From IMG/VR virus record IMGVR_UViG_3300028735_000003, positions 124,001 through 188,000 of that record: a stretch of 64,000 nucleotides of DNA. One strand, given 5' to 3'. Shown in pieces: positions 18,301 through 45,000 of this stretch (the stretch's first letter is position 1; the number at the start of each line of letters is the position of its first letter). The notes below the pieces were generated by a model that saw only the letters and a list, made by a program, of their open reading frames with translations, had not been told where the DNA came from and made no database searches. A program made the translations under genes and the position numbers.

Positions 18301-18787
18301 CAATGCCATCTGTTGTCTTGGCTGCATTGTTAGTTATTGCATTTTTAGGTCTAATACCAGATATATCAGCACCACAGCCGCCCCGGCGTTTCATAATCTG
18401 CGCAAACTCTTGATCTGCTAACATGATTCCGCCGTATGAATCTAATTGACTTGAATACACACCCTGAATTACAAAACAATTAGACAAACTCTGCAATTGA
18501 TATTTATTACCGATTGCAGACATAGGGCTGCCTTGTGGAACAATATATTTGAACCCATCTAATAAATCGAATATTTCCTCTTCAGATAAAGGGTTAGGAT
18601 ATTTGTTTTCGATTCTTGCGAGTTCTTTTGCAATACGACGATGCATATCTTTTGGCGTTAACTCAAGATATACCCCTTCATTATTTTGTAGAGCATATTT
18701 ATCGACGAATACTTTGGCAGCAAATTCATCTCCATCAAAATATTCTAAAGTAGCATCAAACACCTGAGAGTATACATATCCTGTCAT
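15302..18787 (-). CDS. nrdJ: Class II (B12-dependent) ribonucleotide reductase with intein and C-terminal zinc ribbon
   Basis: SNCFV, RRGAEM, AEPGLLFWD, TNP|intein|CGE, RRTGLG, APTGSVS, SISKTCN, KGFTVYREG, C-terminal CPEC...CSAC. No NrdB gene in the window. Confidence 0.9.
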   Translation of the reverse strand: MTGYVYSQVFDATLEYFDGDEFAAKVFVDKYALQNNEGVYLELTPKDMHRRIAKELARIENKYPNPLSEEEIFDLLDGFKYIVPQGSPMSAIGNKYQLQSLSNCFVIQGVYSSQLDSYGGIMLADQEFAQIMKRRGGCGADISGIRPKNAITNNAAKTTDGIGVFMDRFSNTCREVAQNGRRGAEMLTISGKHPEIETFINIKRDLKRVTGANNSIRIYDDFMYAIARDEEYILRWPVDLSVEDAKITKKVRARDIWNQIVDSAWNNAEPGLLFWDHVKRNTPSDIYEEEGYGSISTNPCFSENTLIAVADGRNAVTIKQLADENKDVPVYSMNKKTGMVEIKMGRHPRVTGYNKKLVRVHLDDGSFVDTTPDHKYLLLDGTQKEAKNLKIGDSLPGFTKDLEPIKNDDNNRNYSWFISDRIKEKAIELTKLLGRRFSYQDWQTYAKDNNLPQTFSIFGQNNIKSIINLSRLCAVELGLDFVNEDPRIIKIYRDMLSQNYDARIEDGIVLVKRTCEVCNNEFEIDHLHRESSVCSTICKNIYINKNSDSKEIRKPIKFSPENFEEISGSSNTYNKVVRIEELSGEHTVYNITVDDNHTVSVITKINEHQNNKWFSGISIPQCGEIVLSAYDACRLLVINLSSYVKNPFTKDAAFDYELFHKHAIIAQRLMDDIVDLEIEAIDRILAKVNSDPEPMEVKLVELNLWNKIRKAIIGGRRTGLGPTALGDTIAMMNIKYGSEESIKLTYDIYHALAVAAHTSSCIMAKERGAFPVFNYNKEKDHPYLNSIMKDVSRSTRAMWKKTGRRNIALTTTAPTGSVSTLTRTTSGIEPAYMLTYVRRKKINPSDKNARVDFVDALGDKWQEFTIYHPGIKKWMEVTGNDDITKSPYWGATATEIDWVASVAIQAAAQKSVDHSISKTCNLPANATKELVSEVYMKAWELGCKGFTVYREGCRAGVLVSENSAQKPKHINGRPANIEPHTAPKRPLELPCHIKKSKIDGEAWTIFVGLLNGAPYEVFGGLSKFIDIPNKYKSGKIVKNGKNADGITAYNLVVGEGDDQMIVKDIANIFENKNYGAFTRTLSLAIRHGTPIQFVVEQLTKDKFSEMTSFSRVIARVLKAYIKDGTSSASEKKCPECGAENSIIYEEGCMKCSACKKFSKCG
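16925..17890 (-). mobile_element. Intein (322 aa) ending in Gln, inserted at the RNR active-site NP|CGE
   Basis: Starts CFSENT; block B TTPDHKY; block F VYNITVDDNH; ends ...SIPQ|CGEI. No LAGLIDADG; internal CxxC...CxxxC. Confidence 0.88.
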
Positions 18788-23925: not shown

Positions 23926-26454
23926 TCAACTTGTTTTCATTTCTTTGCATTTTATGACACGGAACCCTTTTTCCGATGAATAAATTTCCGATCTAATAAT
24001 TGAGTGTTTTTTGAGAAACTTAACCTGGTCATAAAAATCAACTATTGCCGCAAATTTTTTACCAGGGAAAAATCTAATAACTCTTCCGATTCTCTGTAAT
24101 GCGCGAATACTGCTTTTACCACCGCCACATAACACCAGTGCATTTAGCATGGGTATATCAACTCCCAAGTCAAATATTGTGCTTGCTAGAATAGCCTGTA
24201 TTTCGCCTTTTATCAGCATTTCTTTAACTTCAATGCGGCGTTTAATAGAATCATTACCATATAACATTTCACATTTAATGCCAGCTTTTATCATGCTATC
24301 AAACAAAATCTGACCATGTTTAATATGCTTGAAAAGTACAAGTGGAGTGTACTTCTTTTCTAGAAGTTCTTTGGTTTGCTGAATAATTAGCATATTTCTG
24401 ACAGCGTTATCAGTGATATACGTTTTGTAGACTGTCTGATATTGAGCCAAAGGCATGCTAATTGGAGGTACGGCTATAAACTTTATGATTGGTTGCGCCA
24501 ATATCTTTTTATCAATCAATTCAGATGCTGATACATCTACTATTTGTTTACCAAGTATACCATTTATTAATAAATCTGTATTGTCATCCCTATATGGCGT
24601 ACCACTAAATCCGTATATGTGTTCAGGGTCAATCTGTTTATGTATTGACTGTATAGTATCACACGTGACAACGTGACATTCGTCGAATATATGAACTTTA
24701 GTTTGTTTGAGTAATGTAAGTATCTTTTCTTTTTGTGATAAATCTACCTTTTCTTCGCAACTTATTTCATCATCTGTACAGATGTTCTTTTTATTTATAT
24801 TCAGAGCGCTTCCAATTGTCCAAATACTGGCAACGTTTATTCTTTCTATTTTGCAAACACCATCACCAATATAACCTATTGGCTCTTTAAACAATATAGA
24901 AAACAGATCATGTGTCTGTTTAAGTAAATCAAGACCTATTACATAAATAATTGTAGGTTTGTTTAATTTTGCAGATATTAATGCGGTACACAGAGTGTTA
25001 TGTGTTAGAATAAAATCATCTGTTGTATATAAATGATCTTTTGAATCTATTAATATACATTGTGCCTGTTTTTTACCAACAAATTCTATTTTGTCAATAT
25101 ATTTAAACGGTTTATATTTTGTTTTTTCGGCAAACAAATTTCTTTTTCTAGATAACCTAAAAGGATTTAATTCTTTTGGCAAAGATATAAAAACTGCGAA
25201 GATATTTTTGCCATCTTTATGAAGATTTTTATACGTGTGATGTGTTTGTTTGTTTTTTATAACCGCTTTACCACCCAAAGATTGTACTATAAATTGTACA
25301 TTTTTAGATAATTGAGATGAAGAACTATAAAAAATTATTGATTTTCCATTTTTAGAGAAAAATCCATTAGTATCCATTAATCCTTGCAAAATTGCTAATC
25401 TAACATCAATACTATTGTATAAATAATCATTTGGTATAAATTTGTCTGAAGATTTTATTCCAATAAGATTATATGCTTTTAATTTAAATATTAACTCATT
25501 TGGTGGAAATCCTTTTTTGATTCTATTAATTACAGAATATTTACTTTTATATTTTTTAATAATTTTTATTGTTTTAGGAATTAAATTACGACAATTATTT
25601 ATAACTTCATCACTTGAAGATAATGATAAACTGTATTCAGAAGACAAACATCCATCACCTAATAAGACTCCCAATAAATATGGATTAATAGTTACATCTC
25701 TTTTATTAAAATGGACAGGTTTTACCATTGGAATTGAATGGTTTCTGCTATTATTTTTATTGTCTTTTAAAGGCTTTATTGAAGATCTAATATCTTGTAA
25801 AGACTTAACACTTCCACTATTGTGTTTTCTTTCATCATAAGTACTTGTATACCATAAATGATCATTACAACATTCAGTTGATGTTCCATCAGAAAAAGAT
25901 ACTTTGTAAATATCTTTTTCCCCTTGTGGGAAAACACTTAAAACATTTTTTGGATTTCCGTCAGAGCCAATAACGCACATGCCTGGAATAATTTCCCCCA
26001 TAGTTATCCAACCATTAGGCGTTAATATCTTTGCATCTAATGGTTGAGCCTTACCAGAACCAGTACAGGCTCGCACAATACCATTGCGCGAATTGCAAGC
26101 GGAATCAACAATTCTTTCCTGATAATCTCTTGGAACCATATTGATATTATTTAAAACATCAGACAGATCAATAGGTTTATTAATTTGTAATGGTGGTCGT
26201 AAATCTTCAATATCCAAATTAACATGTCTTTTATTAATGAATTCTTTAATATCTTCTAGGAGTCCTAAAAAAAAATAACCTCTTTTATCAATAAGAAATG
26301 TTCTACCAGACCACCCATTCTTGTAAGCCTGCGTATATTCTACACCAACTTTTTTATAAGAAAACTCAAATAACAACAATTTAAATAATGAAGAATCTTC
26401 TAATATTATCTGCGCATACTTATTATTATGTATTATGATTTTGCCTTTTTGCAT
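23926..26454 (-). CDS. Superfamily 2 DNA helicase (UvsW/XPB-like) with an intein
   Basis: PRDYQ, TGSGK|intein|T, IFDECH, GFSGTP, GVDIP, QRIGRVIR. Confidence 0.9.
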   Translation of the reverse strand: MQKGKIIIHNNKYAQIILEDSSLFKLLLFEFSYKKVGVEYTQAYKNGWSGRTFLIDKRGYFFLGLLEDIKEFINKRHVNLDIEDLRPPLQINKPIDLSDVLNNINMVPRDYQERIVDSACNSRNGIVRACTGSGKAQPLDAKILTPNGWITMGEIIPGMCVIGSDGNPKNVLSVFPQGEKDIYKVSFSDGTSTECCNDHLWYTSTYDERKHNSGSVKSLQDIRSSIKPLKDNKNNSRNHSIPMVKPVHFNKRDVTINPYLLGVLLGDGCLSSEYSLSLSSSDEVINNCRNLIPKTIKIIKKYKSKYSVINRIKKGFPPNELIFKLKAYNLIGIKSSDKFIPNDYLYNSIDVRLAILQGLMDTNGFFSKNGKSIIFYSSSSQLSKNVQFIVQSLGGKAVIKNKQTHHTYKNLHKDGKNIFAVFISLPKELNPFRLSRKRNLFAEKTKYKPFKYIDKIEFVGKKQAQCILIDSKDHLYTTDDFILTHNTLCTALISAKLNKPTIIYVIGLDLLKQTHDLFSILFKEPIGYIGDGVCKIERINVASIWTIGSALNINKKNICTDDEISCEEKVDLSQKEKILTLLKQTKVHIFDECHVVTCDTIQSIHKQIDPEHIYGFSGTPYRDDNTDLLINGILGKQIVDVSASELIDKKILAQPIIKFIAVPPISMPLAQYQTVYKTYITDNAVRNMLIIQQTKELLEKKYTPLVLFKHIKHGQILFDSMIKAGIKCEMLYGNDSIKRRIEVKEMLIKGEIQAILASTIFDLGVDIPMLNALVLCGGGKSSIRALQRIGRVIRFFPGKKFAAIVDFYDQVKFLKKHSIIRSEIYSSEKGFRVIKCKEMKTS
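24997..26049 (-). mobile_element. Class 3 (Ala1, WCT-motif) intein, 351 aa, with LAGLIDADG domain
   Basis: Starts AQPL; block B DHLW; block F AQCI; block G ILTHN|T; endonuclease motifs LLGVLLGDG and LQGLMDTNG. Confidence 0.9.
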
Positions 26455-26622: not shown

Positions 26623-27875
26623 GAAAACCTCGCAAGGAGACCCACGGCTTTAGCCGTGGGAGGAATTGCGGATTAAAAAATTTAATCCGCTTATTATTTT
26701 TATTTGATTTTCTACTACTAATTATATATATATCTGTGATGCGAAGAATTTATAGTTTTTATTTATCCGCTCCTGATGGGTTTTTAGATTTCCTAAAAAC
26801 CTGTGCAGATATTTATTCGCATCATGTCGAGTGGGCTTTCGAAAATAAATCTACCAATAAAGTTAAAGCTCATCAAGATTTATATCAGAAATTACGATCT
26901 CTTTATCCTGATATTCCTGCCAATATCCTACAAGCTACAAGAGACCAGGCATTAGAGGCAGTTAGAAAGTTGAAATTCAAAATTAAACCGAAAAAGAAAC
27001 CATATTCTGCGGTTAGATATGATGTAAGAACCATTTCTCTTCGTGGTAGTCTATTAACTTTCTCTTGGTCAGGTAAGAGAATCAGAACCCTAATTAACTT
27101 ACCTAAATATTTTCAGCAATATCAAAACTGGACGATGAAGTCTGGAACTATTGGATATGATCAACAAAAAAAGAAACTTAAAGTCAGCTTAATTTTCGAA
27201 GCTCCAGATACTCTTCCTATTCAAAACTCTAATCGAATAGTAGGAGTAGATAGAGGATTATATAATATCGTCTCGTTGTCGGATGGTCAATTATATAATG
27301 CGAAACAAGTAAGAAAACAAAAACGAAAGTTTCTATATGTTAAAAGACAACTTCAAGCAAAAGGCACTCATTCTGCCAAGAGAAAATTACAGAAAAGGTC
27401 AGGACGAGAAAAGCGGTTCAGCTTGAATATTAATCATATTATTTCGAAATGGTTAGTTAATCAACCTTATGATATTTTTGTTCTTGAAGACCTTAAAGGA
27501 ATAAGGAAACAGAAAAAAGCAAGAAATTAAACGGTTGGTTATCTAATTGGACTTTCTATCAGTTAGAAAAATTTTTAGAATATAAAGCATTAGCATTAGG
27601 AAAACAAGTAGTTAAAGTTGATGCAAGATATACTTCTCAAAAATGTTTTAATTGTAGAATTATTGAAAAGTCTAATAGAAATAAGTCGAGATATATTTGT
27701 AGCAGATGTGGTTACATAGAACATGCAGACATTAATGCTGCTAAAAATATTAAGACAAATTATTTTATCTCGTTAGCTGAAAAGAATAACGAGCAGGCTG
27801 TTGTCAATCAGCCAAATGCAGCCAAAACTAATGTTTTGAGCAGCAAGCCCACGACTTTAGTCGTGGGTTATTGAC
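26623..27875 (+). mobile_element. IS200/IS605-family (IS1341-like, tnpB-only) element, copy 1
   Basis: Left hairpin cccacggctttagccgtggg; right hairpin cccacgactttagtcgtggg followed by ttattgac. Ends defined by identity with copy 2; preceded by TCAT. Confidence 0.88.
26736..27874 (+). pseudogene. tnpB: TnpB RNA-guided nuclease, frameshifted near 27520
   Basis: RuvC-I (VGVDRG) and RuvC-II (VLEDL) lie in the first frame, which stops at 27530. The rest (KLNGWLSNWTFYQL..FLEYKA...YTSQKC..C...C..C..HADINAAKNI) continues in the -1 frame to TGA at 27874. Confidence 0.88.
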
Positions 27876-28785: not shown

Positions 28786-28819
28786 ATTTATCTCCTTTTA
28801 TACCAAAAATAATGATAAT

Positions 28820-28859
28820 AAATCTGCCTGATAGAATAAATTCTCCAGCAGGCAGATTT
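28820..28859 (-). terminator. Stem-loop between tubulin and endolysin genes; candidate terminator
   Basis: 11-bp inverted repeat aaatctgcctg/caggcagattt followed on the minus strand by an A/T-rich run. Confidence 0.5.
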
Positions 28860-28931
28860 CTTCTAACAGTATATAGTTCTATATTTTGCAGCAACGAATA
28901 CAATTGACAATATTATATTGTCATATATTGA

Positions 28932-31736
28932 TTACTTTCTACGGTCTACTACACCAGTTACGAATTTACCAAACACAGATGATTTCGCCGCAATTTTATC
29001 TTTCACTTTCTGTGCGGCGGATATTGTTTCATTTCCATTATCTAAATGTAATGTTAGATTTCTGGAATCATCTTTTGATTTAACTTTAGCTTGCAATTCT
29101 TTTGTTTCATTCTTTAATTGTTCTATTCTGGATGATGGTAATCCAAGTCCAGAAAAAATAGAATATACCTTAACAACATTATCTGGCAAATCTATACTAT
29201 AAATACCTTTAAATATACCTTTTGGAGAACCGCATAAATCGTTAATCATACTTCCGGCATAATCAATGCTTGATGCTGGTATTTGTGCCCATACATTTTT
29301 ATTAGCAGCAACAATATACCCTACATATTTAGATTGTTTCAGATCAAACCCTGTCGCTAATAAATTGTTAGTTAAATTATTTATTACAGCTTCTGCTATT
29401 GCAGTGTCTTCCTGATAATTTGTAACATCAAACTCACCATATATTGTTAGCCCCTCACTGTCTAAGAAGATTTTTGAAAATTCCATAGGATCAAGACCCT
29501 TGACTGAAGAAGCCATTGAAGATAGTGTGTTAAATGTATCGATTGGTTCTACAATAGCTTTATTTGCTGTAGGGTAAAAATCTACTTGACTTATATGTTG
29601 ATAGATAGATTCTATCTTAGCGTTGTCTACAATAATTAAATTATTGACCTTTTTTGTTTGCGTGAGTTTTGCTAGCTTCGACAATGTTTCAAGGGCATTT
29701 GATTTTGTTTGGGCATCTTCTGTTTCCATTGGCAACGCAGCAATAACTACTAATGGCTTTCCACTTTGAGATAGAAGTTCAACCAATATTTCGCATGAAC
29801 CTGCACCAGAACCCCCGCCCAAGCTAAGGCACAATACATTAACTAGTGCTTTAGATAGTTTATCATTGACAAGTTGCAAAATTTCACCACTGTGCGACTC
29901 TGCTGCGGCTTTCCCTATGTCAATCTCTTTCGCCGCTCCACCCAGACCATATTCTAAAAGTAATTTGTTGGAATCTGGAATATCAATATACTTTAGATCT
30001 TGCATCGCGGTATTAATAGCAACAGCATCATATCCTAATTTATAGAACGATTCTGCTATCCTACTATTATGAGTAAACATAAGACCATTATTTCCTGCCA
30101 CATAATTCTCATATTTATCAACAGTTAAATCATAAAATTGACATTCTTGTTCGTCAATAGATTCAATACTTTTAATTTCTAAAAGCTTAGGGGATATACT
30201 TTTAATATAAGCTATTTGTTCATTCATTTCTAATGAATCCATAACTTTACCAAAAGAATTTACAGACAACTTTCTTTCGCCATTTGCCCAAAATTTTATA
30301 TTTACACCTAATCTGGCTGATAAATTATTAATATTCTTCATACCACTATTGGTCATCCAATATGATAATTCATCAAAAGATAATGGAACATGTGAATCTG
30401 TAAAATTCTCTTTGTCATTTTGTGACCAAAATATTAACTGTTCCTTTTTAATATAATGTGATAAATTATTTATAATGGTGTCAAATAATGGTCCATGATT
30501 CAATTTACCAGATAATCGTACTTTATATTCTATAGATTCACCTTCTTTTCTTCCAGAAACTATTTCTATTTCAGCTCTACCGCCTATAGAAGAGACTAAA
30601 CAACCTATCTGTTCGGCTAATTTTTTAGAAGATGTTGATACACTAGTTTCACACCAATCCTTACATACAATTCCACTAGAGTCTATTAATCCAGACAAAA
30701 ATGCAGCCCTTATATGTGAATAAGCACCTGATATACAAGAAGGTATCTCTATCGTAGAGGTTTTATACCCCAATTCTACACTAGTTTTACTAATAATAGG
30801 CTCAAATGCAGATTCAAAAAATAATCTTGCTTGTAATCCACAAACACATACTTGTTTGCGCCAAATATTTGTCTTTTGAATTATAGAAGTATGTGGTATT
30901 TGTTTGGAAACCTCAACTATTTTATTTGTAAAATGGTCATCGTCAGAATAAAATGATATTTCGTCATGATTTAACGAATCATGCCCGTTACCAGCAAAAA
31001 CACCTAATAACCAAGCAATATCTGGTGTTATTTCTATGCCTCTAACATACGTTTTTTCTGAAATTACATCCAATACTTCTAGTCTTGTATCAAATAATCT
31101 ATCATTAACGTGTAATGGGGTTAAACTACTTAATGAATTGAAAAAAGCTTTTTCGTTTGCATTTGGTCTAAATACCAAACTAGGATGTTTCTTTGAACAA
31201 GTTAAAAAACTACCATTATTCATAGTTATTTTATTTTTACTAACCGCTCTGTTTTTCCAAACAGCTAATACTTTCGCTTTCTTTAATTCTCCAGTATTCG
31301 GGTCAATTGATACAGTATAAATGTTATCATCATTTAATGATATGTAGGTCTGTTTATCGTCTTTTACATTGATATTTTCTAATTTAGAAGAATTTAATTT
31401 CTTAAAAAAGAAATCTTCGATTGAAATTAATCCATAATTAGATAAATATATGTATGTATTACCATCTATACATCCTGCCTGACCAGTTCCTATAATACCT
31501 AGGTTTAAACTTCTTTCCTTTTTTGCAACAATTTTTGCTGCCATTTGTGTCTCCTGTTTTGCTCGGCTTTTTGCCTTCAAGGCTGCTAATTTATCTGCAT
31601 TTACAGTAGCATCTTCAGATGGTGTTGCTAATTTGTCTGCATTTACAGTGTTTTCAGGTGATTTTGTTTCAACTGTAGAAACATCATCTATTAACTCTTC
31701 CGGAGCTGTTTCGTTTGTAATCGAAGTAGCTGACAT
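28932..31736 (-). CDS. Tubulin/FtsZ-family GTPase (PhuZ/TubZ-like) with an intein
   Basis: GIIGTGQAG|intein|SRIAE, AINT...D, GLGGAAK...G, tubulin signature SLGGGSGAG, IIVDN, LDPMEF. About 465 aa after splicing. Confidence 0.88.
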   Translation of the reverse strand: MSATSITNETAPEELIDDVSTVETKSPENTVNADKLATPSEDATVNADKLAALKAKSRAKQETQMAAKIVAKKERSLNLGIIGTGQAGCIDGNTYIYLSNYGLISIEDFFFKKLNSSKLENINVKDDKQTYISLNDDNIYTVSIDPNTGELKKAKVLAVWKNRAVSKNKITMNNGSFLTCSKKHPSLVFRPNANEKAFFNSLSSLTPLHVNDRLFDTRLEVLDVISEKTYVRGIEITPDIAWLLGVFAGNGHDSLNHDEISFYSDDDHFTNKIVEVSKQIPHTSIIQKTNIWRKQVCVCGLQARLFFESAFEPIISKTSVELGYKTSTIEIPSCISGAYSHIRAAFLSGLIDSSGIVCKDWCETSVSTSSKKLAEQIGCLVSSIGGRAEIEIVSGRKEGESIEYKVRLSGKLNHGPLFDTIINNLSHYIKKEQLIFWSQNDKENFTDSHVPLSFDELSYWMTNSGMKNINNLSARLGVNIKFWANGERKLSVNSFGKVMDSLEMNEQIAYIKSISPKLLEIKSIESIDEQECQFYDLTVDKYENYVAGNNGLMFTHNSRIAESFYKLGYDAVAINTAMQDLKYIDIPDSNKLLLEYGLGGAAKEIDIGKAAAESHSGEILQLVNDKLSKALVNVLCLSLGGGSGAGSCEILVELLSQSGKPLVVIAALPMETEDAQTKSNALETLSKLAKLTQTKKVNNLIIVDNAKIESIYQHISQVDFYPTANKAIVEPIDTFNTLSSMASSVKGLDPMEFSKIFLDSEGLTIYGEFDVTNYQEDTAIAEAVINNLTNNLLATGFDLKQSKYVGYIVAANKNVWAQIPASSIDYAGSMINDLCGSPKGIFKGIYSIDLPDNVVKVYSIFSGLGLPSSRIEQLKNETKELQAKVKSKDDSRNLTLHLDNGNETISAAQKVKDKIAAKSSVFGKFVTGVVDRRK
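30066..31472 (-). mobile_element. Intein (469 aa) with degenerate LAGLIDADG domain in the tubulin
   Basis: Starts CIDGNT; block B CSKKHP; ends FYDLTVDKYENYVAG..GLMFTHN|S; motifs LLGVFAGNG and FLSGLIDSSG. Confidence 0.9.
31584..31649. repeat. 24-bp direct repeat (1 mismatch) encoding TVNADKLA twice in the tubulin N-terminal extension
   Basis: 31584-31607 versus 31626-31649. Confidence 0.8.
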
Positions 31737-31996
31737 AAAATCTCCTAACTTATTTTATTAAACTTTAGTTTGTGGCTAGTAATACCAGATTTGTTGTTCT
31801 ATATCTCAATATTACGAAATCCTTTTCGATTTGCAAGAAATTAATTAGTTGATTTTCATCGAATAATGTATAAAAAGAGAATACATCAATTCAACACTTG
31901 CTTACAAATCTAAATTGGATAATTGATCTATTAAGCCTTTAACTTTCATGAACCTTTCCCTTTATTTATGGTACATTATTACATATTTGGCATGCG

Positions 31997-32968
31997 TTAT
32001 TTGAACCACCACTGGTTGTTTAGATACCATGGGACACATAAATTTGATAATCCATCAGACAGCTTAATGGTGGGTTTCCAGCCAAGTTTTTTTAGTTTAT
32101 CTGAATTGATTGAGTATCTAAAATCGTGCCCATTCTTTCTAGGATCTTCAACGAATGTTATCAAATCATGACCAGTCTTCATAACATTACATATATTTTG
32201 TATTACTTCAATATTAGAAAACTCTTGATTTGCAGATATGTTGTATATTTCGTTTGGTTTACCCTCCTTTAACACAGTCATAATTCCAGTACAATTATCG
32301 AATACATGAGTCCAGTCTCGTAGCTGCGAACCCTGTCCGTAAATAGGAATAGGAATGCCCTTTAGAATGTTTTTTATAGCTTTTGGAATCAACTTTTCGG
32401 GCGACTGCCTTGGTCCATAGTTGTTAGCAGACCTAGTAATGTTATAAACTAAACCATGCGATTGGTTGGCTGCTTTTACGATTAATTCTCCAGCAGCTTT
32501 TGTAGCAGCATATGGATTACGAGGGTTGATAGGAGAATCTTCAGTCCATGAAGGCTCATCTTCAGATGTTAATTGACCATATACTTCATCTGTTGATATG
32601 TAAATAAGTTTTTGAACACCATGTTTAATGCAAGCATTTACTATAACTTGTGTTCCTAAAACATTAGACGTTACAAACGAATTAGGATCAATAAATGAAT
32701 GGTCAACAAAAGTCTCGGCAGCACCATGTATAACTATATCTGGTTTTTCAAATTGAAAAATTACATCAATAACATGTTGATCCCTGATATCTGCTATATG
32801 AAATGTATGATTTTTGTTCCAATACATAGAATTAATGACGTTTGAATTAATTCTATCTATACTAACAAAAGAATAAGGTTGTTTCTCATAGATAGCCTTA
32901 CGAATGAAGTTTCCGAATATAAACCCACAGGATCCAGTTATTAAAACTTTTGGTCTGTTATTGTTCAT
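31997..32968 (-). CDS. rfbB: dTDP-glucose 4,6-dehydratase-like NAD-dependent SDR
   Basis: VLITGSCGFI, HGAAETFVD, STDEVYG, YAATK, NNYGPRQ.PEKLIP, RDWTHV.D, HDFRYS. Confidence 0.85.
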   Translation of the reverse strand: MNNNRPKVLITGSCGFIFGNFIRKAIYEKQPYSFVSIDRINSNVINSMYWNKNHTFHIADIRDQHVIDVIFQFEKPDIVIHGAAETFVDHSFIDPNSFVTSNVLGTQVIVNACIKHGVQKLIYISTDEVYGQLTSEDEPSWTEDSPINPRNPYAATKAAGELIVKAANQSHGLVYNITRSANNYGPRQSPEKLIPKAIKNILKGIPIPIYGQGSQLRDWTHVFDNCTGIMTVLKEGKPNEIYNISANQEFSNIEVIQNICNVMKTGHDLITFVEDPRKNGHDFRYSINSDKLKKLGWKPTIKLSDGLSNLCVPWYLNNQWWFK

Positions 32969-37976: not shown

Positions 37977-40900
37977 TCAAGCAGGTAGTATGTGCAAGAA
38001 AGGAACAAAATTATAGCTGTGAGCATATGTATCGCTTGGGCTACCATCACCATATGTAGACGGATTATTATAAGTAATTACCAATCTGACCATCTTACAA
38101 ATAGCTGCTTCTAATCCGCTTCCAGGAGATAGACTCAAATGTACTTCATAAACAAAATCAGAGGCTCCTTCAGATAATTCCGATGCTATATTGTTAGAAG
38201 ATAAATATGTAGCTTCTGTATTAGTGGTAGTCATACCAGTCATATAAATATAACTATGTGTAGACACATTATACAATTGTATTTGGGCAGTATTTGCAAC
38301 ATTAGTGGTCTCAAGTATAGCTTCCAGCTTAATTTCCTTTAAAGATTGACCAATGTATTTATCAAATCTAAATGGGAAAGCACCAATAACAGTTGGAGAA
38401 GCGCTATTATGAGAGAACACTCCAGCAGTACCATAAATATATACCGGATTCTTATAGTAGAAGCTTGGATCTAACTTACCATATCCATCAGTCTTAGGAA
38501 CTCTGTTAGCATCAAGTGTGCCACGAGAAAAAGATCTAACACCTTCTAGATCATAAACGAATTGATAACTTAATGCACCACCAGAACTCATTAATACTGT
38601 ACCATAAGGACCAGTATCATTAAGTCCTGTACCACCATGAATGATTGGTAACACACCAGTTACTTCTGTTTCAAGATCAATTAATGTGGATGGACCGCCA
38701 ATTGCAGGACCACTGAATACACTAATCAGTGATAATATATTCTGTACCTTAGCAGAATCAACAAATAAAGGAGTATTGTTAAATCCGCCTTTCTTAAGAT
38801 ATACGCTTATCTGAATCTTAGTACTTAGCGTTCGTAATACTAAATCTTCATATAAATTAGTGAAGTTAAGTGTCAATAAACCGTTCTCATAATCTACAGA
38901 AACCCCTATTTTACCATCAACAATGATACCTTCATATCCATCTCCAATACCATTAGTATTAGGAGAAAATGACTGTACGGCTACAGAAAATCTAACCTGA
39001 TCTTTAGTCAATGCATCAGATTGAACAAAAGAACAATCAGCGAATCTCATGGCTGGAAATCCAAGTTTGGTTAATCCAGTTGGTAATCCTGTTGTTCCAT
39101 CAAGTTCGCTAGCAATAAAGTCTTGTAATATATTTATTGTTTTTTCTGAAGAGTACAATCCATTTGGAATCTCAATAACAACAGTACCTACTTCGAAATC
39201 TACCTTATAGAAAGTGCCATCAGGTCTCTGAAGATCTCCTTCTCCAATAATAATGTTATTTGGGGCAAATATATCTATCTTACCAGGATCAAAGTCTGGT
39301 TGAGATGAAAATACATTACACAATATACCATCTAAAGAGCAAGGATGACTGCCTGCCCCAGACAATGTTGTAAATACGGTTGGAACTAATTTTGCTTTGC
39401 TGTTACATACTATTAGATTTTCGTTCCATGTTAATTGTTTTTGAACATTAAACGCGACTGGTTCTGTATAAAAGTTATGATTTGCAAAATAAGTATCTCC
39501 TTCAAATACATCTTGTGGTGGGTGTATCTCAGTAGGTCTTCCAGTAGATACTGAAGAATAATCGTCAGTTCTATCAATGAATTTTTCTACTTTAAGTCTT
39601 AATACATTAAACTTTGTGCCGATTTTTGTGTAAGGATCTGTGGTTGGAGCCGGATATGTTTGGAATGGGGACGAAACATGATGAACCCTATTTATGTAGT
39701 TTTGTACTAAATAACCATCTCCAATAGTTACGGCAAAATCTCCATTGATATCAGCGCGAAGCATCTGAGCAATAGTATCTCCAGTAAGTATAACTTTTCG
39801 GATGGTTAATACATCTGATGTTCCATCAACGCCAACAATATCAAAAGCCCCCTTGTTAGTTAGGTCTGAAGGAGAAACAATTACTAATTTATAGCTTGAA
39901 ATCCCTATAATTGAACTAAAATCTATAGTGGAAGATGTAAACAAGCCTATTCTTTCATCATTAGGATCTGCAAGTAATACTCCATCTAATGCGCTAGCAA
40001 CTACTGACCCATATCCATCAATTAATTGGAACTCTAAACCAAATGCATTATTAAATGGATTGATGTAGGCACTGTAACCGTTAGTATATGTAGTAGTGAT
40101 TCCATCAGTTGTAACAATTGAATCTTGTGGTAAACCTGTATTAAAATTGAAACCAAGATATGATACTAACAAATCAAGATCTGTTGAATCTATGATGCCA
40201 TCTCCGTTGACATCACCTACAATCATAGAGCACAATCTAGCGTCAGATACACGATAATATATATTTGGTCTATCGGCATCTGGAGTAATCTTAGCATCTA
40301 CAAAATCACCATTTAATAAATTATATTCTAAATTAATAACAGACGTATCATATCTTCCTGTATCAGTTTGATCTGTTACAATCCTTATTAAGATTTCATC
40401 TCTAGCAAAAGTTGCAGCATGTAAATTAGAAGCAAATACTGAGCCGGCAGGGTCGAAAGATTTTTTATTTTTATCTGATATGGCACCCAGTATTAATGGC
40501 TCAGATGCAGCTTCGAGATTTACAATATCGGTTGAATTAAGCAATCTTATTTCAGGCACGTATTCTTGTCTTGAATCAACTGGTTGCCCAGTTCTTTGAT
40601 CAGGAATAGGTACACTCTCCAATGTTGTTGCTGACAAAACTGCTCTATATACATCATTCCCCGTAAATTGCAAACCTTTATACGAATAGTCTACGGTTGC
40701 TTGTGTAGTAGTGTCCACCGTAGTCTTAGGTATAATAACACCGTGTCCTGTATCATATCCTTGACCATCCGAGATCTTTGCGGCAGATGTCCAAATTCTG
40801 AACCATAAATCTTCTTCTGGTATGTCAACCCACAATGTTCCAGTAAATGTGGTAATTCTGGAATTATCAAGCCTATTAGAACCATTATCAATTAGAATAT

Positions 40901-42020
40901 CACATTTATTTGCAGAACCAGAGCGTTTAAGTGTGAAAGCGTAATAATTTCCAACAGTTAAAGCTGCTCCTGCTGCAATCGGGCTATTACTAAACACAAA
41001 ATCTACTGGTTGTGGAACAGAATTACCATAGCCATCATCTAATACAACACCCATTGCTTTTAAGCTGTCATAGTTAACACTTATTTGAGCAATAGGCATA
41101 TTAGTTGGGGCAAAATCTATTGCCAAATCAGGAGCTACATCAGATGGGCACTCTATACTAGTTTGTAGAGGATACACACTTAGAACCAAATCACCAGTCC
41201 ACGCTAAATCAGTTTCGGACCCCGGCTCAAGGTTTCTAACAGATAATAATAATGTGATCTTTTGAATATTATTTGTAGTTGCGATGAACTTTTGACCTAT
41301 TTGTGTAGTAACATCACCGTGTGACAATACCTTTTGGTCTTTACTTCCGGTATATATTCCAAGAGTATCTATATTATAGTATGGCAAAGCAGCCTGTAAT
41401 GCCGTTGATAGTGATAAAGTGCCGTTGAAGAACATATCCCTAAAAAACAAGTTTGGTTCAACGTCCTGTGCTAGCATAATTGCACTACGCGATAACGTCA
41501 TAGGGTTTGCCTCTCTAATCACTATTCGTCCACCAAGATTTAATGATAAAGAGGGATCACCAATAAAATCGTTAAACAATAATACTAAAATTTTAGTAAA
41601 ATGTTTTTGACCAACTTGAATCTCATTGGTTTTGAATACAAATGTCTCAAATTGTAAGTTACTTTCAAAGTCTAACCCTATTACTGCGATTTTTACAGTT
41701 TTTCTTCCTGCCGCTAGTGAATTGGTCAGTTCAATTTCTAATTGATTTCCAAAATTACTATCTGTTGGTTGGGATATCCTATAATCAGTGTTAGATGCCG
41801 CCCTAGCATCACCATCTAGATATCCGCTAACTAGAGAAGAGTCAAATAATACATTCTGAACCAACGCCTCTGGCAATACACCAGAACCAATGTGGTTATT
41901 TATGATACCTGATTGTATTGTATCATTATAGCCTTGTTCTAATGTCAAATCTGAGTCATCGACTTGCTCGGCGTCGAACCAAATATTTTTAATGGCGGAA
42001 ACAGGATTTCTTTTTGTCAT
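37977..42020 (-). CDS. Large baseplate-associated/fibre protein with dockerin-like EF-hand repeats, 5 DGY motifs
   Basis: Follows the baseplate wedge genes. GDVNGDGIIDSTD and ADINGDFAVTIGD repeats; fibre-type GVLPIIHGGTG motif; C-terminal domain shared with the collagen proteins. Confidence 0.65.
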   Translation of the reverse strand: MTKRNPVSAIKNIWFDAEQVDDSDLTLEQGYNDTIQSGIINNHIGSGVLPEALVQNVLFDSSLVSGYLDGDARAASNTDYRISQPTDSNFGNQLEIELTNSLAAGRKTVKIAVIGLDFESNLQFETFVFKTNEIQVGQKHFTKILVLLFNDFIGDPSLSLNLGGRIVIREANPMTLSRSAIMLAQDVEPNLFFRDMFFNGTLSLSTALQAALPYYNIDTLGIYTGSKDQKVLSHGDVTTQIGQKFIATTNNIQKITLLLSVRNLEPGSETDLAWTGDLVLSVYPLQTSIECPSDVAPDLAIDFAPTNMPIAQISVNYDSLKAMGVVLDDGYGNSVPQPVDFVFSNSPIAAGAALTVGNYYAFTLKRSGSANKCDILIDNGSNRLDNSRITTFTGTLWVDIPEEDLWFRIWTSAAKISDGQGYDTGHGVIIPKTTVDTTTQATVDYSYKGLQFTGNDVYRAVLSATTLESVPIPDQRTGQPVDSRQEYVPEIRLLNSTDIVNLEAASEPLILGAISDKNKKSFDPAGSVFASNLHAATFARDEILIRIVTDQTDTGRYDTSVINLEYNLLNGDFVDAKITPDADRPNIYYRVSDARLCSMIVGDVNGDGIIDSTDLDLLVSYLGFNFNTGLPQDSIVTTDGITTTYTNGYSAYINPFNNAFGLEFQLIDGYGSVVASALDGVLLADPNDERIGLFTSSTIDFSSIIGISSYKLVIVSPSDLTNKGAFDIVGVDGTSDVLTIRKVILTGDTIAQMLRADINGDFAVTIGDGYLVQNYINRVHHVSSPFQTYPAPTTDPYTKIGTKFNVLRLKVEKFIDRTDDYSSVSTGRPTEIHPPQDVFEGDTYFANHNFYTEPVAFNVQKQLTWNENLIVCNSKAKLVPTVFTTLSGAGSHPCSLDGILCNVFSSQPDFDPGKIDIFAPNNIIIGEGDLQRPDGTFYKVDFEVGTVVIEIPNGLYSSEKTINILQDFIASELDGTTGLPTGLTKLGFPAMRFADCSFVQSDALTKDQVRFSVAVQSFSPNTNGIGDGYEGIIVDGKIGVSVDYENGLLTLNFTNLYEDLVLRTLSTKIQISVYLKKGGFNNTPLFVDSAKVQNILSLISVFSGPAIGGPSTLIDLETEVTGVLPIIHGGTGLNDTGPYGTVLMSSGGALSYQFVYDLEGVRSFSRGTLDANRVPKTDGYGKLDPSFYYKNPVYIYGTAGVFSHNSASPTVIGAFPFRFDKYIGQSLKEIKLEAILETTNVANTAQIQLYNVSTHSYIYMTGMTTTNTEATYLSSNNIASELSEGASDFVYEVHLSLSPGSGLEAAICKMVRLVITYNNPSTYGDGSPSDTYAHSYNFVPFLHILPA

Positions 42021-42065
42021 GTTGATCTCATATAATATGTATTAAGATTAGTTACATACGCCATT

Positions 42066-45000
42066 TTATCGTGTGTATTGTATGTAGACCTTGCTATTGG
42101 CAGGTTTGAGTGTCTTTATGAGCTTTTCCAGAACCTCTTGAACCTTTACACTGCTATTTACTATACCGAAAGAATCAAAAATATTAATGGAGAAGTCAAA
42201 CGCGCCAGTATTTCTATTAATAATGGTCGTAAAATCTTCATTTTTAATATTTGTTGAGTCGCTATCCAATAGATATGTTGTGTACAAGTCCTTAGTCACC
42301 GGGTACACTATATTTAAGTTGCTATTGTAATTAACATCAATTGGCTCACCATATGGGGAATAAACTGGTCTTGATATGTTGCTAATTCTGAGATTATTTA
42401 TCAACCCGAATAGCTTATTCGAACCAGTATACTGAGAACCAATATATAACGTATGTATTGGATCTTTAAATCTAATATTTCCAACGATGTTGGAGCCAAA
42501 TCCAACTCTAACAGAGCCCATAACAGTAGGAGAGTTTCCGAATACTAATCCAGACCCGAATAAAATACTTGAATCATTGCCATATTCGTAACCATCAAGG
42601 AACAAACTTATTTCATCTTGACCCTTACCACCATTTATCTTATATCCTACCCTAACACGATGCCATGTATTTCTGACCCAACGTGTTGGGGCACGGACAA
42701 CATAATCAGTTCCAGATGCTGAGATTGCAAAATTAATATATCCAAATTCATCCTTGTATATTGCCATCCTATCGCCCTGCATTCCATTAGGGATATATTT
42801 TACAAGAACTTTAGACTTTTGTGCTGGCAATTTTCTGTTTAATCTTATTATTTGTGTATTTAGAGTCACATTGTTATTTTGTAGTGTTTGATAAGTAACA
42901 GTAACCTCTGTATTTGGATCTGGAAGTGTTTTGGCTAAATAAATTGTCTTTCTATCTGGTCCAATAGAACCTCCAGCAAAGTAATCAGTTGCAGAATAAT
43001 CTCCTGGTATCTTAACGGATATTATTTGCAATATTGGTAAGTCTACTTCTACGACTGTTGCGGAAGTGCTTGTATAATTTCTCATGACAGCGCGCTGAGT
43101 ATCAATTTCAACCTTCCCGCCAGCAAAATAATCAATCTTTGGATCGCCTGATTTTAACGTGACGCTTAGAACTCTATCAACCGTATGAGGCAATTTTACA
43201 GATACCAAGTCTGTGCTGACTGCTTCTTCTATTACTGCACTGGTAGCGTCAAAATAGAATCTTGTTACAGGATCATTTGCGGTATCATATAATGGACATG
43301 TCCAAAATTCTATAGTACCCTGCTTTCTAAAATCTAATATTCCATCATTACCCAAAATCATAGGCTCTGATATGATAGCTAAGCTATCCCCGAAATTCTC
43401 ATTGACCTTGGCAGAAGAATGGAACTGTTGTTTGTCAGTGTAAGTATTGATATAGAAATCAGCCTCATTTGTGAACGGATATTTGTCAAAATTAATCAAC
43501 ATTAAAGTGTCGCTATCTTTCTTAAGAGGCTTTATAGAGTTAAAGTCTTTCGTAACAGATCTTTGATTACTACTTACTTGTTCTCCGATTCTTGTATCAG
43601 TAAGCATACTAGAATAGACTTTTGTCTGACCTATAATTGCATTTATTTGGTTTCCGCCAAACATGTCTGACCCCAAGAATACATCTCCGCGTGGCAAATC
43701 TAATTTAATTCTAGCGTATGTTTGATAGTCAACCTCATAAAATCCATGAGATAACATGTAGGCAGTACTTGGTAACAAACCAACTTCTAGAGTTATGAAT
43801 CCATTCTGTAAACCGCTTCTGTAATCACTAACATTTAGAATCTGATACACACCACCAGTAAAAGTTGGTATTGGATAAGGAGGATATGGTCCCGCTGTTG
43901 TTGCTTCTATTGTAAGTGTCTTTTTATCAGAAGAAACACCAAGTATTCTATAGAATCCAGCGGCTATTAGTGGGGATTGAATTACTAAATACCCACCAAC
44001 ACAATGATCACTGAATGTATAATATCCATCTGATACAGTATTAGAGCCTGTACTATACAGAGTAGTTCCTGTGCCAATTTGATAACTATATCTAACAACA
44101 GGCGCTAACCCACTGAATTCACTGTATGTGATTGGATATTTCTCTCTAACATCCAAAACAAGAGCATTCTTGGAAGAATTGATTGGTCTGGCAACAACAT
44201 TAATATAGTTTATAGAAATATATGGATTTGTAAAATCCAAGGTACCATAATCATCAAAATATATAGTTTCACTTACGGTATAAACCCCGGTTACTCCATT
44301 TATAGTAACTGCCACCGGTGTTGAGAAATCTACATTATTACCAGATATTGTGACACTGATTGTTCTACCAAATTGACTATTTGAAGGATGTGTACAAGGG
44401 AAATTAATTGAATGAAACTCTCCCCCAATAAGCGTAGAATTTGAAGGACCTATGGCTGAAGCATATCCGTCATTCAATATTAGTTTAGTTATATGCAATT
44501 CATCTAGAGATATTGGAGGAGGCATCCTGGTCATAAGAATATTTTCACGTTCGTCACTCCAAACATAATATTGCTTTTTAATTCTCCTATGATTCAATCC
44601 AAGTGTTCTGATTAGAATCAAATCATTAGCAAAAACAGAATTAGAAATAGTTAGTATATTGTTGAAATATCCATCTTTAGATATTGAGTATGATGGCCTT
44701 GTTGCTCTTACACCCGGTATTTCGATTTCATCATTTGAATAAATATTAAATTCTACATTACTCAACGCCACTGGCAAATCGCCAGATATTTTTAATGAAT
44801 TATTAGATACCTGCAAAATAACATAAGTAATTGGCAGCGCAGGATCATTAATTCTGATCGAATAACCAGCCAACACACCCGCTGTAGTAAAATTAATTGA
44901 TCCAGATGTTACAATATTTGTATTTATAGAACCAGATAAATCAGATCCAGAAACCATAGAACTAATTCTGGTAATTTGAATATTGGAGGCAATATCAATA

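What the first reader, a model, noticed from the sequence alone, without database searches (positions are those of the whole stretch)
28932..31736. Intein inside a phage tubulin, in the first GTP-binding loop
Seen: a 469-aa intein splits GTGQAG|SRIAE of a tubulin/FtsZ homologue that keeps the GGGSGAG signature. Established: inteins concentrate in replication and nucleotide-metabolism enzymes and terminases; PhuZ/TubZ position phage DNA in large phages. I do not recall an intein in a phage tubulin. Inference: filament assembly depends on splicing, which could act as a conditional or timing switch.
Basis: partly seen in the sequence, partly recalled or inferred. Interest (0 to 1): 0.7.

Follow-up and report, generated by a model that had tools for sequence, protein, structure and literature searches.

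The report
Homing intein inside huge-phage tubulin
A huge phage from a microbial mat carries a self-splicing protein insert (an intein) exactly in the first GTP-binding loop of its TubZ-type tubulin. It is a real, mobile, selfish element in a host protein family where I found no earlier report of one, but it works like an ordinary intein.

Summary
Window 28932..31736 (-) is one intact 934-aa ORF. It has an 88-aa N-extein ending GTGQAG, a 469-aa intein (Cys1 ... His-Asn) and a 377-aa C-extein starting SRIAE and keeping GGGSGAG.

Syntenic relatives carry the same gene without the 1407 nt, so the insertion is precise. The host protein is a TubZ-like tubulin, not PhuZ, and no chimallin was found in the 354-kb phage record.

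The intein is a standard class-1, PI-PfuI-like LAGLIDADG intein with all splicing residues intact. At least ten other alleles carry it at the same T1-loop site, about 1% of close homologues. They are scattered over the extein tree (monophyly rejected, p = 2e-6). The intein and extein trees disagree. The +1 Ser codon is AGY in 4 of 5 occupied alleles and TCN in 25 of 26 empty ones. These are marks of homing.

More distant relatives carry related inteins in the T4 signature motif (GGG|TGSG).

This window's copy has lost both catalytic LAGLIDADG aspartates, so its endonuclease is probably dead.

Tubulin function must depend on splicing. Nothing supports a regulatory switch.

I found no published report of an intein in a tubulin/FtsZ protein.

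The parts
28932..31736 (-). Whole precursor gene (934 codons plus stop): TubZ-like tubulin interrupted by an intein
31741..31746 (-). Ribosome-binding site AGGAGA, 4 nt upstream of the ATG at 31736
   Evidence: read directly from the sequence
31473..31736 (-). N-extein (residues 1-88): a poorly conserved tail, strand S1 and the T1 loop ending G-T-G-Q-A-G
   Evidence: S1 and H1 placement from the model of P0002
31584..31649 (-). Two copies of a 24-nt repeat 42 nt apart in the N-extein tail, encoding TVNADKLA twice. Relatives lack this duplication
30066..31472 (-). Intein, 469 codons (Cys1 ... His468-Asn469). It has a HINT splicing domain plus a LAGLIDADG endonuclease domain, is PI-PfuI-like, and has 28.8% GC against 35-38% in the exteins
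31470..31472 (-). Block A nucleophile, Cys1 of the intein
   Evidence: invariant in 12 of 12 T1-site alleles
31185..31196 (-). Block B S-K-K-H (the SxxH form of TxxH, as in PI-PfuI)
   Evidence: S181 and H184 are invariant
30981..31004 (-). LAGLIDADG motif 1, GVFAGNGH. The catalytic Asp is replaced by Asn (D162N); the ten close relatives all have GDG
30666..30689 (-). LAGLIDADG motif 2, LIDSSGIV. The catalytic acid is replaced by Ser (D266S); relatives have D[SA]DGT and PI-PfuI has DAEG
30066..30137 (-). Blocks F and G (FYDLTV...NYVAG...THN): the block F Asp, the penultimate His and the terminal Asn
30063..30065 (-). +1 nucleophile Ser558, codon AGT (AGY in 4 of 5 occupied alleles, TCN in 25 of 26 empty alleles)
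28935..30065 (-). C-extein (residues 558-934): helix H1 onward of the GTPase domain, the TubZ-like C-terminal domain, a long C-terminal helix and a conserved basic tail ending DRRK
29799..29819 (-). T4 tubulin signature GGGSGAG, intact here. It is the second intein insertion site in distant relatives
28817..28862 (.). 19-nt inverted repeat (84% complementary) about 70 nt downstream of the stop codon; a possible terminator hairpin
   Evidence: sequence only; function inferred

Best explanation
The gene encodes a TubZ-family tubulin of an uncultured tailed huge phage. The record is 354 kb, estimated 79% complete, and comes from a microbial mat. A selfish class-1 intein of the PI-PfuI type has invaded the gene at the DNA encoding the T1 (GxGQAG|S) GTP-binding loop.

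Proposed sequence of events:
1. Translation gives a 934-aa precursor in which strand S1 and the T1 loop are separated from helix H1 by 469 residues. The precursor should therefore be unable to form the nucleotide pocket or the longitudinal filament interface (inferred).
2. The intein splices by the standard route: an N-S acyl shift at Cys1, transesterification onto Ser+1, cyclisation of the terminal Asn helped by the penultimate His, then an O-N shift. This releases a 465-aa tubulin with the native T1 loop and a free 53-kDa intein. This is inferred from intact catalytic residues and from purifying selection on the exteins.
3. In relatives, the free intein is a LAGLIDADG homing endonuclease. 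During co-infection it cuts the empty T1-loop site, and repair copies the intein in together with the adjacent AGY Ser codon. This is inferred from the patchy distribution, the conflict between intein and extein trees, and the codon footprint.
4. In this window's copy both catalytic aspartates of the endonuclease are replaced, and 9 of its 10 unique substitutions at otherwise invariant columns lie in the endonuclease region. This copy is therefore probably an immobile passenger that survives because only precise deletion could remove it.

It is one of several inteins in this genome's replication module.
For: Anatomy and domain hits.

Precise 1407-nt insertion relative to syntenic empty alleles.

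Splicing residues:
- Cys1, S-x-x-H, the block F Asp, His-Asn and Ser+1 are invariant in 12 T1-site alleles.
- They align residue for residue with PI-PfuI, 1dq3, at E 1.2e-14.
- The precursor model matches PI-PfuI (TM 0.74) and the TliVMA intein (TM 0.81), then TubZ.

Host protein:
- Best sequence match among solved structures is RepX/TubZ 4ei7, E 9e-14.
- The model of the intein-less homologue (pLDDT 80.6) matches B. thuringiensis TubZ 2xka/2xkb and B. cereus TubZ 4ei7 at E 1e-25 to 1e-23, TM 0.75-0.80.

The gene is under selection: extein dN/dS against the L020 allele is 0.10/1.49.

The intein-bearing allele is found again at about 97% identity, with contigs crossing both junctions, in an independent hot-spring metagenome. 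A fragment crossing the C-terminal junction occurs in a third sample, and a fragment inside the intein in a fourth.

Mobility:
- About 1436 intein-less close homologues against 10 T1-site alleles.
- 11 occupied tips need 10 changes on a 37-row extein tree, at least 8 of them forced by well-supported branches. Shuffled labels give a mean of 9.7.
- Monophyly of the occupied exteins is rejected, p-AU 2e-6.
- The P0124 and P0126 inteins are sisters (100/100, 73% identical), while their exteins are 62% identical and sisterhood of the exteins is disfavoured, p = 0.025.
- The +1 Ser codon is AGY in 4 of 5 occupied alleles and TCN in 25 of 26 empty ones, Fisher p = 7.7e-4.

Endonuclease decay:
- D162N, D266S and seven more unique changes lie in the endonuclease region.
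- Among the listed differences to the hot-spring variant, the endonuclease region has 11 nonsynonymous and 8 synonymous changes. The N-terminal splicing region has 1 and 5.

Intein-rich context: PhoH, RNR and UvsW-like helicase inteins lie in the window, with further intein-family matches elsewhere in the record.
Against: - Splicing has not been observed. No protein or RNA data exist for this phage.
- dS against the nearest allele with DNA is near saturation, and the time of intein entry is unknown. Purifying selection on the exteins after invasion is therefore likely but not proven.
- The codon association is not corrected for phylogeny and rests on 5 occupied alleles. One occupied allele (L067) has TCT and one empty allele (L040) has AGC.
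- The AU test for a second tree conflict (P0129+P0133+P0134) gave p = 0.06.
- The list of differences to the hot-spring variant was truncated by the tool (57 not shown), so the synonymous/nonsynonymous contrast is partial.
- Asp-to-Asn in one LAGLIDADG motif does not by itself prove total loss of DNA binding or nicking.
- Patchiness could owe as much to repeated precise loss as to repeated gain.
Confidence: 0.8

Rival explanations
1. Regulatory switch. Splicing is conditional on, for example, redox state, temperature or time in infection. The phage uses it to delay or gate tubulin filament assembly.
For: Insertion in the T1 loop should make assembly strictly dependent on splicing. Conditional splicing is known for some other inteins (background knowledge, not tested here). 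The intein has several conserved cysteines, including one next to block B.
Against: - The nearest relatives, with exteins 86-89% identical and the same synteny, manage without the intein.
- Only about 1% of close alleles carry it.
- Presence is scattered like random labels on the extein tree.
- It carries homing-endonuclease machinery.
- The same genome has ordinary inteins in PhoH, RNR and a helicase.
- No feature specific to regulation was found.
Confidence: 0.08
2. Dead gene. The intein no longer splices, and the tubulin is a pseudogene in this phage.
For: The endonuclease part of this copy is visibly decaying. This tubulin family is not universal in phages: only a distant 25% match, in Bacillus phage G, was found among cultured phages.
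Against: - The 934-codon frame is open.
- All splicing residues are intact, and this copy's unique substitutions spare the splicing blocks.
- The extein is 88-89% identical to its intein-less sister, on an end branch of normal length (0.07-0.08).
- Extein dN/dS is about 0.07.
- The RBS is intact.
- The same allele persists at about 97% identity in another sample, with no indel listed inside the gene.
Confidence: 0.05
3. The intein is still an active homing element in this very copy. The endonuclease would tolerate Asn and Ser at the two metal-binding positions, or act as a nickase.
For: The rest of the LAGLIDADG fold is predicted with confidence. The domain has not been deleted, so this is not a mini-intein.
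Against: Both canonical acidic residues are lost at once, and only in this copy among the 11 close T1-site alleles. There are further non-conservative changes at invariant endonuclease columns: G169H, C205R, G233E, Q354K and S356N. The endonuclease region also has excess nonsynonymous change against a 97% variant.
Confidence: 0.1

Closest known systems
PI-PfuI, the intein of Pyrococcus furiosus ribonucleotide reductase (PDB 1dq3), and related LAGLIDADG inteins (TliVMA 7qss, PI-TkoII 2cw7)
   Same: Same class-1 architecture: a HINT splicing domain split by a LAGLIDADG endonuclease, plus an extra DNA-recognition region. Similar size (469 aa against 454 aa). Blocks B, F and G are nearly identical (SxxH; FYDLTV..NY.AG..HN). 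Sequence E 1.2e-14; fold TM 0.74-0.81.
   Different: The host protein is a tubulin-family GTPase rather than a replication or nucleotide-metabolism enzyme. It is phage-borne. In this copy both catalytic acids of the endonuclease are replaced.
TubZ / RepX of Bacillus plasmids (pBtoxis TubZ 2xka, 2xkb, 3m89; B. cereus TubZ/RepX 4ei7) and TubZ of Clostridium phage c-st (3v3t)
   Same: The exteins have the Tubulin GTPase domain, the TubZ-like C-terminal domain, a long C-terminal helix and a basic C-terminal tail. These are the best sequence and fold matches.
   Different: Identity is only about 20%. There is an extra N-terminal tail of about 60 aa. No TubR-like gene or iteron centromere lies next to the gene. 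The gene sits between sugar-modification genes and a replication module. No intein is reported in those TubZ proteins.
PhuZ of phiKZ-like nucleus-forming phages (3zbp)
   Same: A phage-encoded member of the tubulin/FtsZ superfamily. There is a weak PHROG match to 'tubulin PhuZ', E 8e-8 over 130 residues.
   Different: The sequence match to 3zbp is only E about 1e-3, and PhuZ is not in the top 50 fold matches. The C-terminus is basic (…DRRK), not the acidic PhuZ tail (the PhuZ tail is from background knowledge). No chimallin (PF25677) was found in the record.
Inteins in nucleotide-binding loops of other NTPases (P-loop of helicases, RecA/RadA, DnaB, terminases, IF2)
   Same: Insertion falls exactly in the most conserved nucleotide-contacting loop, and the loop's own Ser/Thr serves as the +1 nucleophile. 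The same window shows this in a helicase Walker A motif, GSGK|T.
   Different: Here the loops are the T1 and T4 loops of the tubulin fold, a different nucleotide-binding architecture. I found no described intein for it.

Membership tests
Intein (class 1, canonical) | N-terminal nucleophile (Cys or Ser) as the first residue, block A | tested here: met
   Cys89 is intein residue 1, invariant in 12 of 12 T1-site alleles; NCBIfam intein_Nterm 33.7 bits against a cut-off of 24.5
Intein (class 1, canonical) | Block B [TS]xxH | tested here: met
   S181-K-K-H184, both invariant; aligned to SPWH of PI-PfuI
Intein (class 1, canonical) | C-terminal His-Asn followed by a Ser, Thr or Cys +1 nucleophile (block G), with the block F Asp | tested here: met
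   D536, H556, N557 and S558 are invariant; NCBIfam intein_Cterm 26.9 bits against a cut-off of 15.6
Intein (class 1, canonical) | In-frame insertion that is precisely absent from orthologous alleles, with the host motif restored on removal | tested here: met
   1407 nt are absent from L020, L026 and L027; the empty alleles read GxGQAGSRxAE
Intein (class 1, canonical) | Protein splicing actually occurs | not testable with these tools
   Indirect support only: extein dN/dS about 0.07 and intact catalytic residues
Active LAGLIDADG homing endonuclease | Two LAGLIDADG motifs, each ending in a catalytic Asp or Glu | tested here: not met
   The motifs are present, but they read GNG (D162N) and SSG (D266S). 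The 10 close relatives keep the Asp, and PI-PfuI has Glu at the second site
Tubulin/FtsZ superfamily | T1 loop GxGxxG and T4 signature GGG[TS]G[SA]G | tested here: met
   GTGQAG is restored only after conceptual splicing; GGGSGAG lies at 640-646; Pfam Tubulin 56 bits against a cut-off of 33
Tubulin/FtsZ superfamily | Conserved polar and acidic residues after helix H7 (the T7 region), needed for GTPase activation in the filament | tested here: inconclusive
   N736 and D749 are invariant across 20 homologues and fall after the long H7 helix of the model. Their assignment to T7 is by position only
TubZ family (structural) | TubZ-type C-terminal domain and extended C-terminal helix; closest fold and sequence to TubZ | tested here: met
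   PF22453 34.7 bits against a cut-off of 26; 4ei7 E 9e-14; Foldseek ranks 1-22 are all TubZ, TM 0.73-0.80; the model has helix 385-412
TubZRC partition system | Adjacent TubR DNA-binding adaptor gene and tubC iteron centromere | tested here: not met
   The neighbours are a sugar dehydratase and a GH25 lysozyme, a helicase or homing endonucleases in the window and four relatives. No iterons occur in the 260-nt upstream region. A distant adaptor gene is not excluded
PhuZ / nucleus-forming phage spindle | PhuZ-type protein together with the chimallin shell protein | tested here: not met
   No PF25677 match in the 354-kb record (the record is estimated 79% complete). PhuZ 3zbp only at E about 1e-3 and absent from the top 50 fold hits

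The most novel reading that the evidence does not exclude
The two GTP-contacting loops of the tubulin fold (T1 and T4) are recurrent natural intein homing sites in huge-phage TubZ proteins. These would be the first inteins described in any cytoskeletal tubulin/FtsZ protein. In at least some lineages splicing would be condition-dependent, so the intein would act as a natural post-translational gate on filament assembly during infection.
Probability: 0.1. Interest if true: 0.75.

Novelty: new member of a known kind. Interest (0 to 1): 0.5.

Why it matters
For intein biology, this extends the known host range of inteins to the tubulin/FtsZ fold. It also gives two independent insertion sites, T1 and T4, and both use the loop's own Ser or Thr as the +1 nucleophile. 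That is a clean new example of the rule that inteins settle in the most conserved ligand-binding loops.

For phage biology, a homing element at about 1% frequency is scattered across tubulin alleles that are only 47-75% identical. Inteins come and go in the neighbouring helicase and sugar-dehydratase genes too. Together this implies frequent co-infection and recombination among uncultured huge phages (relatives' contigs reach about 500 kb).

In practice, a natural tubulin whose assembly should be strictly splicing-dependent is a ready-made starting point for engineered control of FtsZ/TubZ polymerisation.

The mechanism itself is conventional, and no new biology of the tubulin is shown.

Tried and rejected
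- Megablast of the gene against 50,697 GenBank phage records found nothing. tblastn of the C-extein found only Bacillus phage G at 25% identity. The family is therefore essentially known only from metagenomes.
- A global MAFFT alignment of the occupied gene against the empty gene misplaced the gap. I replaced it with blastn.
- The AU tests on the 106-row tree did not finish in the time allowed. I repeated them on a 37-row subset.
- A 12-row extein-only tree was unresolved, so it was not used for congruence.
- P0129+P0133+P0134, whose inteins form a clade, could not be shown to conflict with the extein tree (p = 0.06).
- DNA of the occupied alleles P0122 and P0129 could not be fetched. The planned test for a co-conversion tract in the closest occupied/empty pair (P0122 and P0031) was therefore not possible.
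- Sliding nucleotide identity between the window's exteins and L027 shows no clear tract around the site.
- Searches of the record for Terminase_6N and Gp23 gave nothing and are uninformative. Phage identity rests on the virus-database record, a baseplate-wedge match, and one close homologue that NCBI names as from an 'uncultured Caudovirales phage'.
- No intein-less joint was seen in the four metagenome runs. These are assembled contigs and cannot show absence.
- Seven full-text literature searches found no paper on an intein in PhuZ, TubZ, FtsZ, CetZ or tubulin. Intein catalogues such as InBase and subscription journals were not searchable.
- PhuZ identity and a TubZRC partition operon were considered and rejected (see the membership tests).
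Full report
**1. What is in the sequence**

Window 28932..31736 on the minus strand is one uninterrupted ORF of 934 codons. It has an AGGAGA ribosome-binding site 4 nt upstream of the ATG and an inverted repeat downstream of the stop codon.

Pfam finds a Tubulin GTPase domain (residues 564-712), a TubZ-like C-terminal domain (736-875), an intein splicing domain (140-557) and LAGLIDADG/Hom_end modules (331-410). NCBIfam finds the N- and C-terminal intein splicing regions at 89-185 and 534-558, both above their curated cut-offs.

The intein runs from Cys89 to Asn557, which is 469 aa at window 30066..31472. The flanks read GTGQAG | SRIAES, and the tubulin signature GGGSGAG is intact at 640-646.

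**2. The insertion is precise**

A syntenic relative (L020) carries the same gene as a 452-aa protein. blastn aligns the window gene's nt 116-263 and nt 1674-2805 to contiguous L020 sequence, leaving exactly the 1407 intein nucleotides unmatched.

Twenty-six distinct empty alleles from public contigs read G-x-G-Q-[AG]-G-S-R-x-[AS]-E without interruption. In the AlphaFold model of the closest intein-less homologue (P0002, pLDDT 80.6) this motif lies between strand S1 (65-70) and helix H1 (71-83). That is the T1 phosphate-binding loop.

**3. What the host protein is**

- The record is a 353,765-bp virus contig, estimated 79% complete, assembled from a microbial-mat sample.
- The window contains a baseplate-wedge gene. 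Homologues of the tubulin sit on contigs of up to about 500 kb, and NCBI names one as from an 'uncultured Caudovirales phage'.
- Among cultured phages only Bacillus phage G has a homologue, at 25% identity.
- By sequence, the best solved relative is B. cereus RepX/TubZ (4ei7, E 9e-14). FtsZ and CetZ follow, and phiKZ PhuZ is marginal at E about 1e-3.
- By fold, ranks 1-22 are all TubZ (TM 0.73-0.80, including the long C-terminal helix), and PhuZ is not in the top 50.
- No chimallin was found in the record. No TubR-like gene or iterons adjoin the gene.

So the protein is TubZ-like by structure. It is not a PhuZ, and it is not shown to be part of a TubZRC partition operon.

Its position is conserved: downstream of sugar-modification genes and at or near the head of a replication module (UvsW-like helicase, helicase loader, DnaB, sigma factor, RNR). 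The same order appears in a relative whose extein is only 53% identical. What the filament does is not known. A role connected with phage DNA is plausible but inferred.

**4. What the intein is**

It is a canonical class-1 intein of the PI-PfuI type.

- Sequence match to PI-PfuI (1dq3): E 1.2e-14, with near-identical blocks B, F and G.
- The precursor model (pLDDT 73) matches PI-PfuI at TM 0.74 and the TliVMA intein at TM 0.81.
- Cys1, S-x-x-H, the block F Asp, His-Asn and Ser+1 are invariant in all 12 alleles with an intein at this site.

The exteins are under strong purifying selection. dN/dS against L020 is 0.10/1.49, and 0.08/1.9 in the tubulin core.

The occupied allele turns up again at about 97% identity in an independent hot-spring metagenome, with contigs crossing both junctions. 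A fragment crossing the C-terminal junction occurs in a third sample, and a fragment inside the intein in a fourth.

I therefore take the intein to be splicing-competent, giving a 465-aa tubulin with a native T1 loop. This is inferred, not observed.

**5. It behaves as a mobile, selfish element**

- *Frequency.* A search restricted to intein-less lengths gave about 1436 homologues (74-91% identical among the best 120). The search restricted to long proteins gave only 15, ten of them with this intein at this site.
- *Scatter on the tree.* On a 106-row extein tree, 19 intein-bearing tips need 16 state changes. On a 37-row tree, 11 T1-site tips need 10 changes, at least 8 forced by well-supported branches. 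That is no fewer than random labels give (mean 9.7).
- *Monophyly.* A single clade of occupied exteins is rejected (lnL difference 610, p-AU 2e-6). The window's own extein is sister to the intein-less P0002 at 88-89% identity.
- *Tree conflict.* The inteins of P0124 and P0126 are sisters (100/100) and 73% identical. Their exteins are 62% identical, and forcing them to be sisters is disfavoured (p = 0.025).
- *Codon footprint.* The +1 Ser codon is AGY in 4 of 5 occupied alleles for which DNA was available, although these are not sister alleles. It is TCN in 25 of 26 distinct empty alleles (Fisher p = 7.7e-4, not corrected for phylogeny). The two codon families are at least two substitutions apart. 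The simplest reading is that the codon travels with the intein by co-conversion, or that it protects the occupied site from re-cutting.
- *Base composition.* Intein GC is 28.8% against 35-38% in the exteins. A relative shows the same contrast, 31.5% against 40.3%.

**6. This particular copy looks immobilised**

Among the 11 close T1-site alleles, only the window's intein has lost the acidic residue at the end of both LAGLIDADG motifs. It reads GNG where the others read GDG, and SSG where the others read [SA]DG and PI-PfuI reads AEG.

In a leave-one-out count, it has 10 substitutions at columns invariant in the other ten. Nine fall in the endonuclease region and are mostly non-conservative. The other alleles have 1-7, mostly conservative.

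Among the differences the tool listed between the window and the 97% hot-spring variant, the endonuclease region has 11 nonsynonymous and 8 synonymous changes. The N-terminal splicing region has 1 and 5 (the list is partial).

This fits the usual homing cycle: invasion, fixation in a lineage, decay of the endonuclease, and continued selection for splicing.

**7. A second site, and an intein-rich neighbourhood**

Among the 150 best 50%-identity cluster representatives of the family, nine carry inteins.

- One (P0250, 32% identical extein) carries it at the same T1 site.
- Eight carry it in the T4 signature motif, as GGG | C…HN | [TS]G[SG]G, where the motif's own Thr or Ser is the +1 nucleophile.
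- Several of these sit next to close intein-less sisters.
- The T4-site inteins are 22-25% identical to the window's intein, mostly over their full length (E down to 3e-26). That is closer than the other inteins of the same genome.

The window itself also holds inteins in PIN-PhoH, in the RNR large subunit, and in the Walker A motif of a UvsW-like helicase. The record has further intein-family and LAGLIDADG matches outside the window. Relatives lack the helicase intein, but they carry one in the sugar dehydratase or epimerase that is intein-free here.

**8. Comparison with what is known, and novelty**

The intein's mechanism and architecture are conventional. The host protein family is the new element.

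Seven full-text searches of about 8.4 million open papers and preprints found nothing on an intein in PhuZ, TubZ, FtsZ, CetZ or tubulin. Reviews of jumbo phages mention inteins only in polymerase, RNR and similar genes. From memory, the classical intein catalogue lists no tubulin/FtsZ host, but I could not check it.

The alleles already sit unremarked in public protein collections; one is named only 'tubulin-like protein CetZ'. I rate this as a new member of a known kind.

**9.

It is sound structural inference that filament assembly depends on splicing. A role as a conditional or timing switch has no support here, and the population pattern argues against it, though it is not excluded (my estimate is about 0.1).

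Interest is moderate (0.5). It is a clear, well-supported first for the tubulin fold, with tidy evolutionary footprints and some value as a tool, but it is not a new mechanism.

Noticed in passing
window 23926-26454 (-); intein at 24997-26049: The UvsW-like helicase carries a 351-aa LAGLIDADG intein inserted in the Walker A motif (GSGK | T). Its first residue is Ala rather than Cys or Ser, it ends THN, and +1 is Thr. The syntenic relative L020:11153-12622 has the empty allele (489 aa). An Ala1 intein implies a non-canonical (class 2 or 3-like) splicing route.
   Followed up: partly
window 12508-14892 (-) and 15302-18787 (-): The PIN-PhoH protein (794 aa) carries an intein with a LAGLIDADG_2 endonuclease (residues about 373-702). 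The ribonucleotide reductase large subunit (1161 aa) carries an intein at residues about 308-597. The whole record has at least 5 N-terminal intein-region matches and 7 LAGLIDADG_3 matches.
   Followed up: partly
L020:4984-6981 and L024:1685-3946 (window counterpart 31997-32968, intein-free): Relatives carry an intein inside an NAD-dependent sugar 4,6-dehydratase or epimerase (665 and 753 aa, against 323 aa here). This is another unusual intein host. It shows inteins coming and going gene by gene along one syntenic backbone.
   Followed up: partly
window 26736-27530 (+): A TnpB/OrfB_IS605-like ORF (264 aa, partial domain match) is the only plus-strand gene in a long run of minus-strand genes. 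It is absent from the syntenic relatives L020 and L024, so it is probably an inserted and possibly truncated IS element.
   Followed up: no
L020:9396-10142 and L020:6994-7959: In the intein-less relative the tubulin gene is flanked by a free-standing GIY-YIG homing endonuclease and by a 321-aa ORF. Both are missing from the window, so different mobile elements occupy the same neighbourhood in different phages.
   Followed up: no
window 30063-30065; loci L020-L067: The +1 Ser codon is AGY in 4 of 5 intein-bearing alleles and TCN in 25 of 26 empty alleles. The single empty allele with AGC (L040) could be a scar of precise intein loss or an endonuclease-resistant variant.
   Followed up: partly
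proteins P0136, P0182, P0186, P0199, P0220, P0239, P0266, P0274 (not in the window): Distant homologues of the tubulin carry a related intein in the T4 signature motif (GGG | C…HN | [TS]G). P0136 differs from its intein-less sister P0178 by very short branches, which suggests recent gain or loss.
   Followed up: partly
window 31584-31649 (-): Two 24-nt repeat copies 42 nt apart (96% identical) duplicate the peptide TVNADKLA in the N-terminal tail of the tubulin. Relatives lack the duplication.
   Followed up: no
window 8415-10268 (-) and 37977-53326 (-): A 617-aa ORF matches the 'grass antifreeze beta roll' family (E 1e-13). Three giant ORFs (1347, 2387 and 1365 aa) lie in a row, and the last has a baseplate-wedge match. 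They are probably tail or baseplate proteins with no other recognisable family.
   Followed up: no
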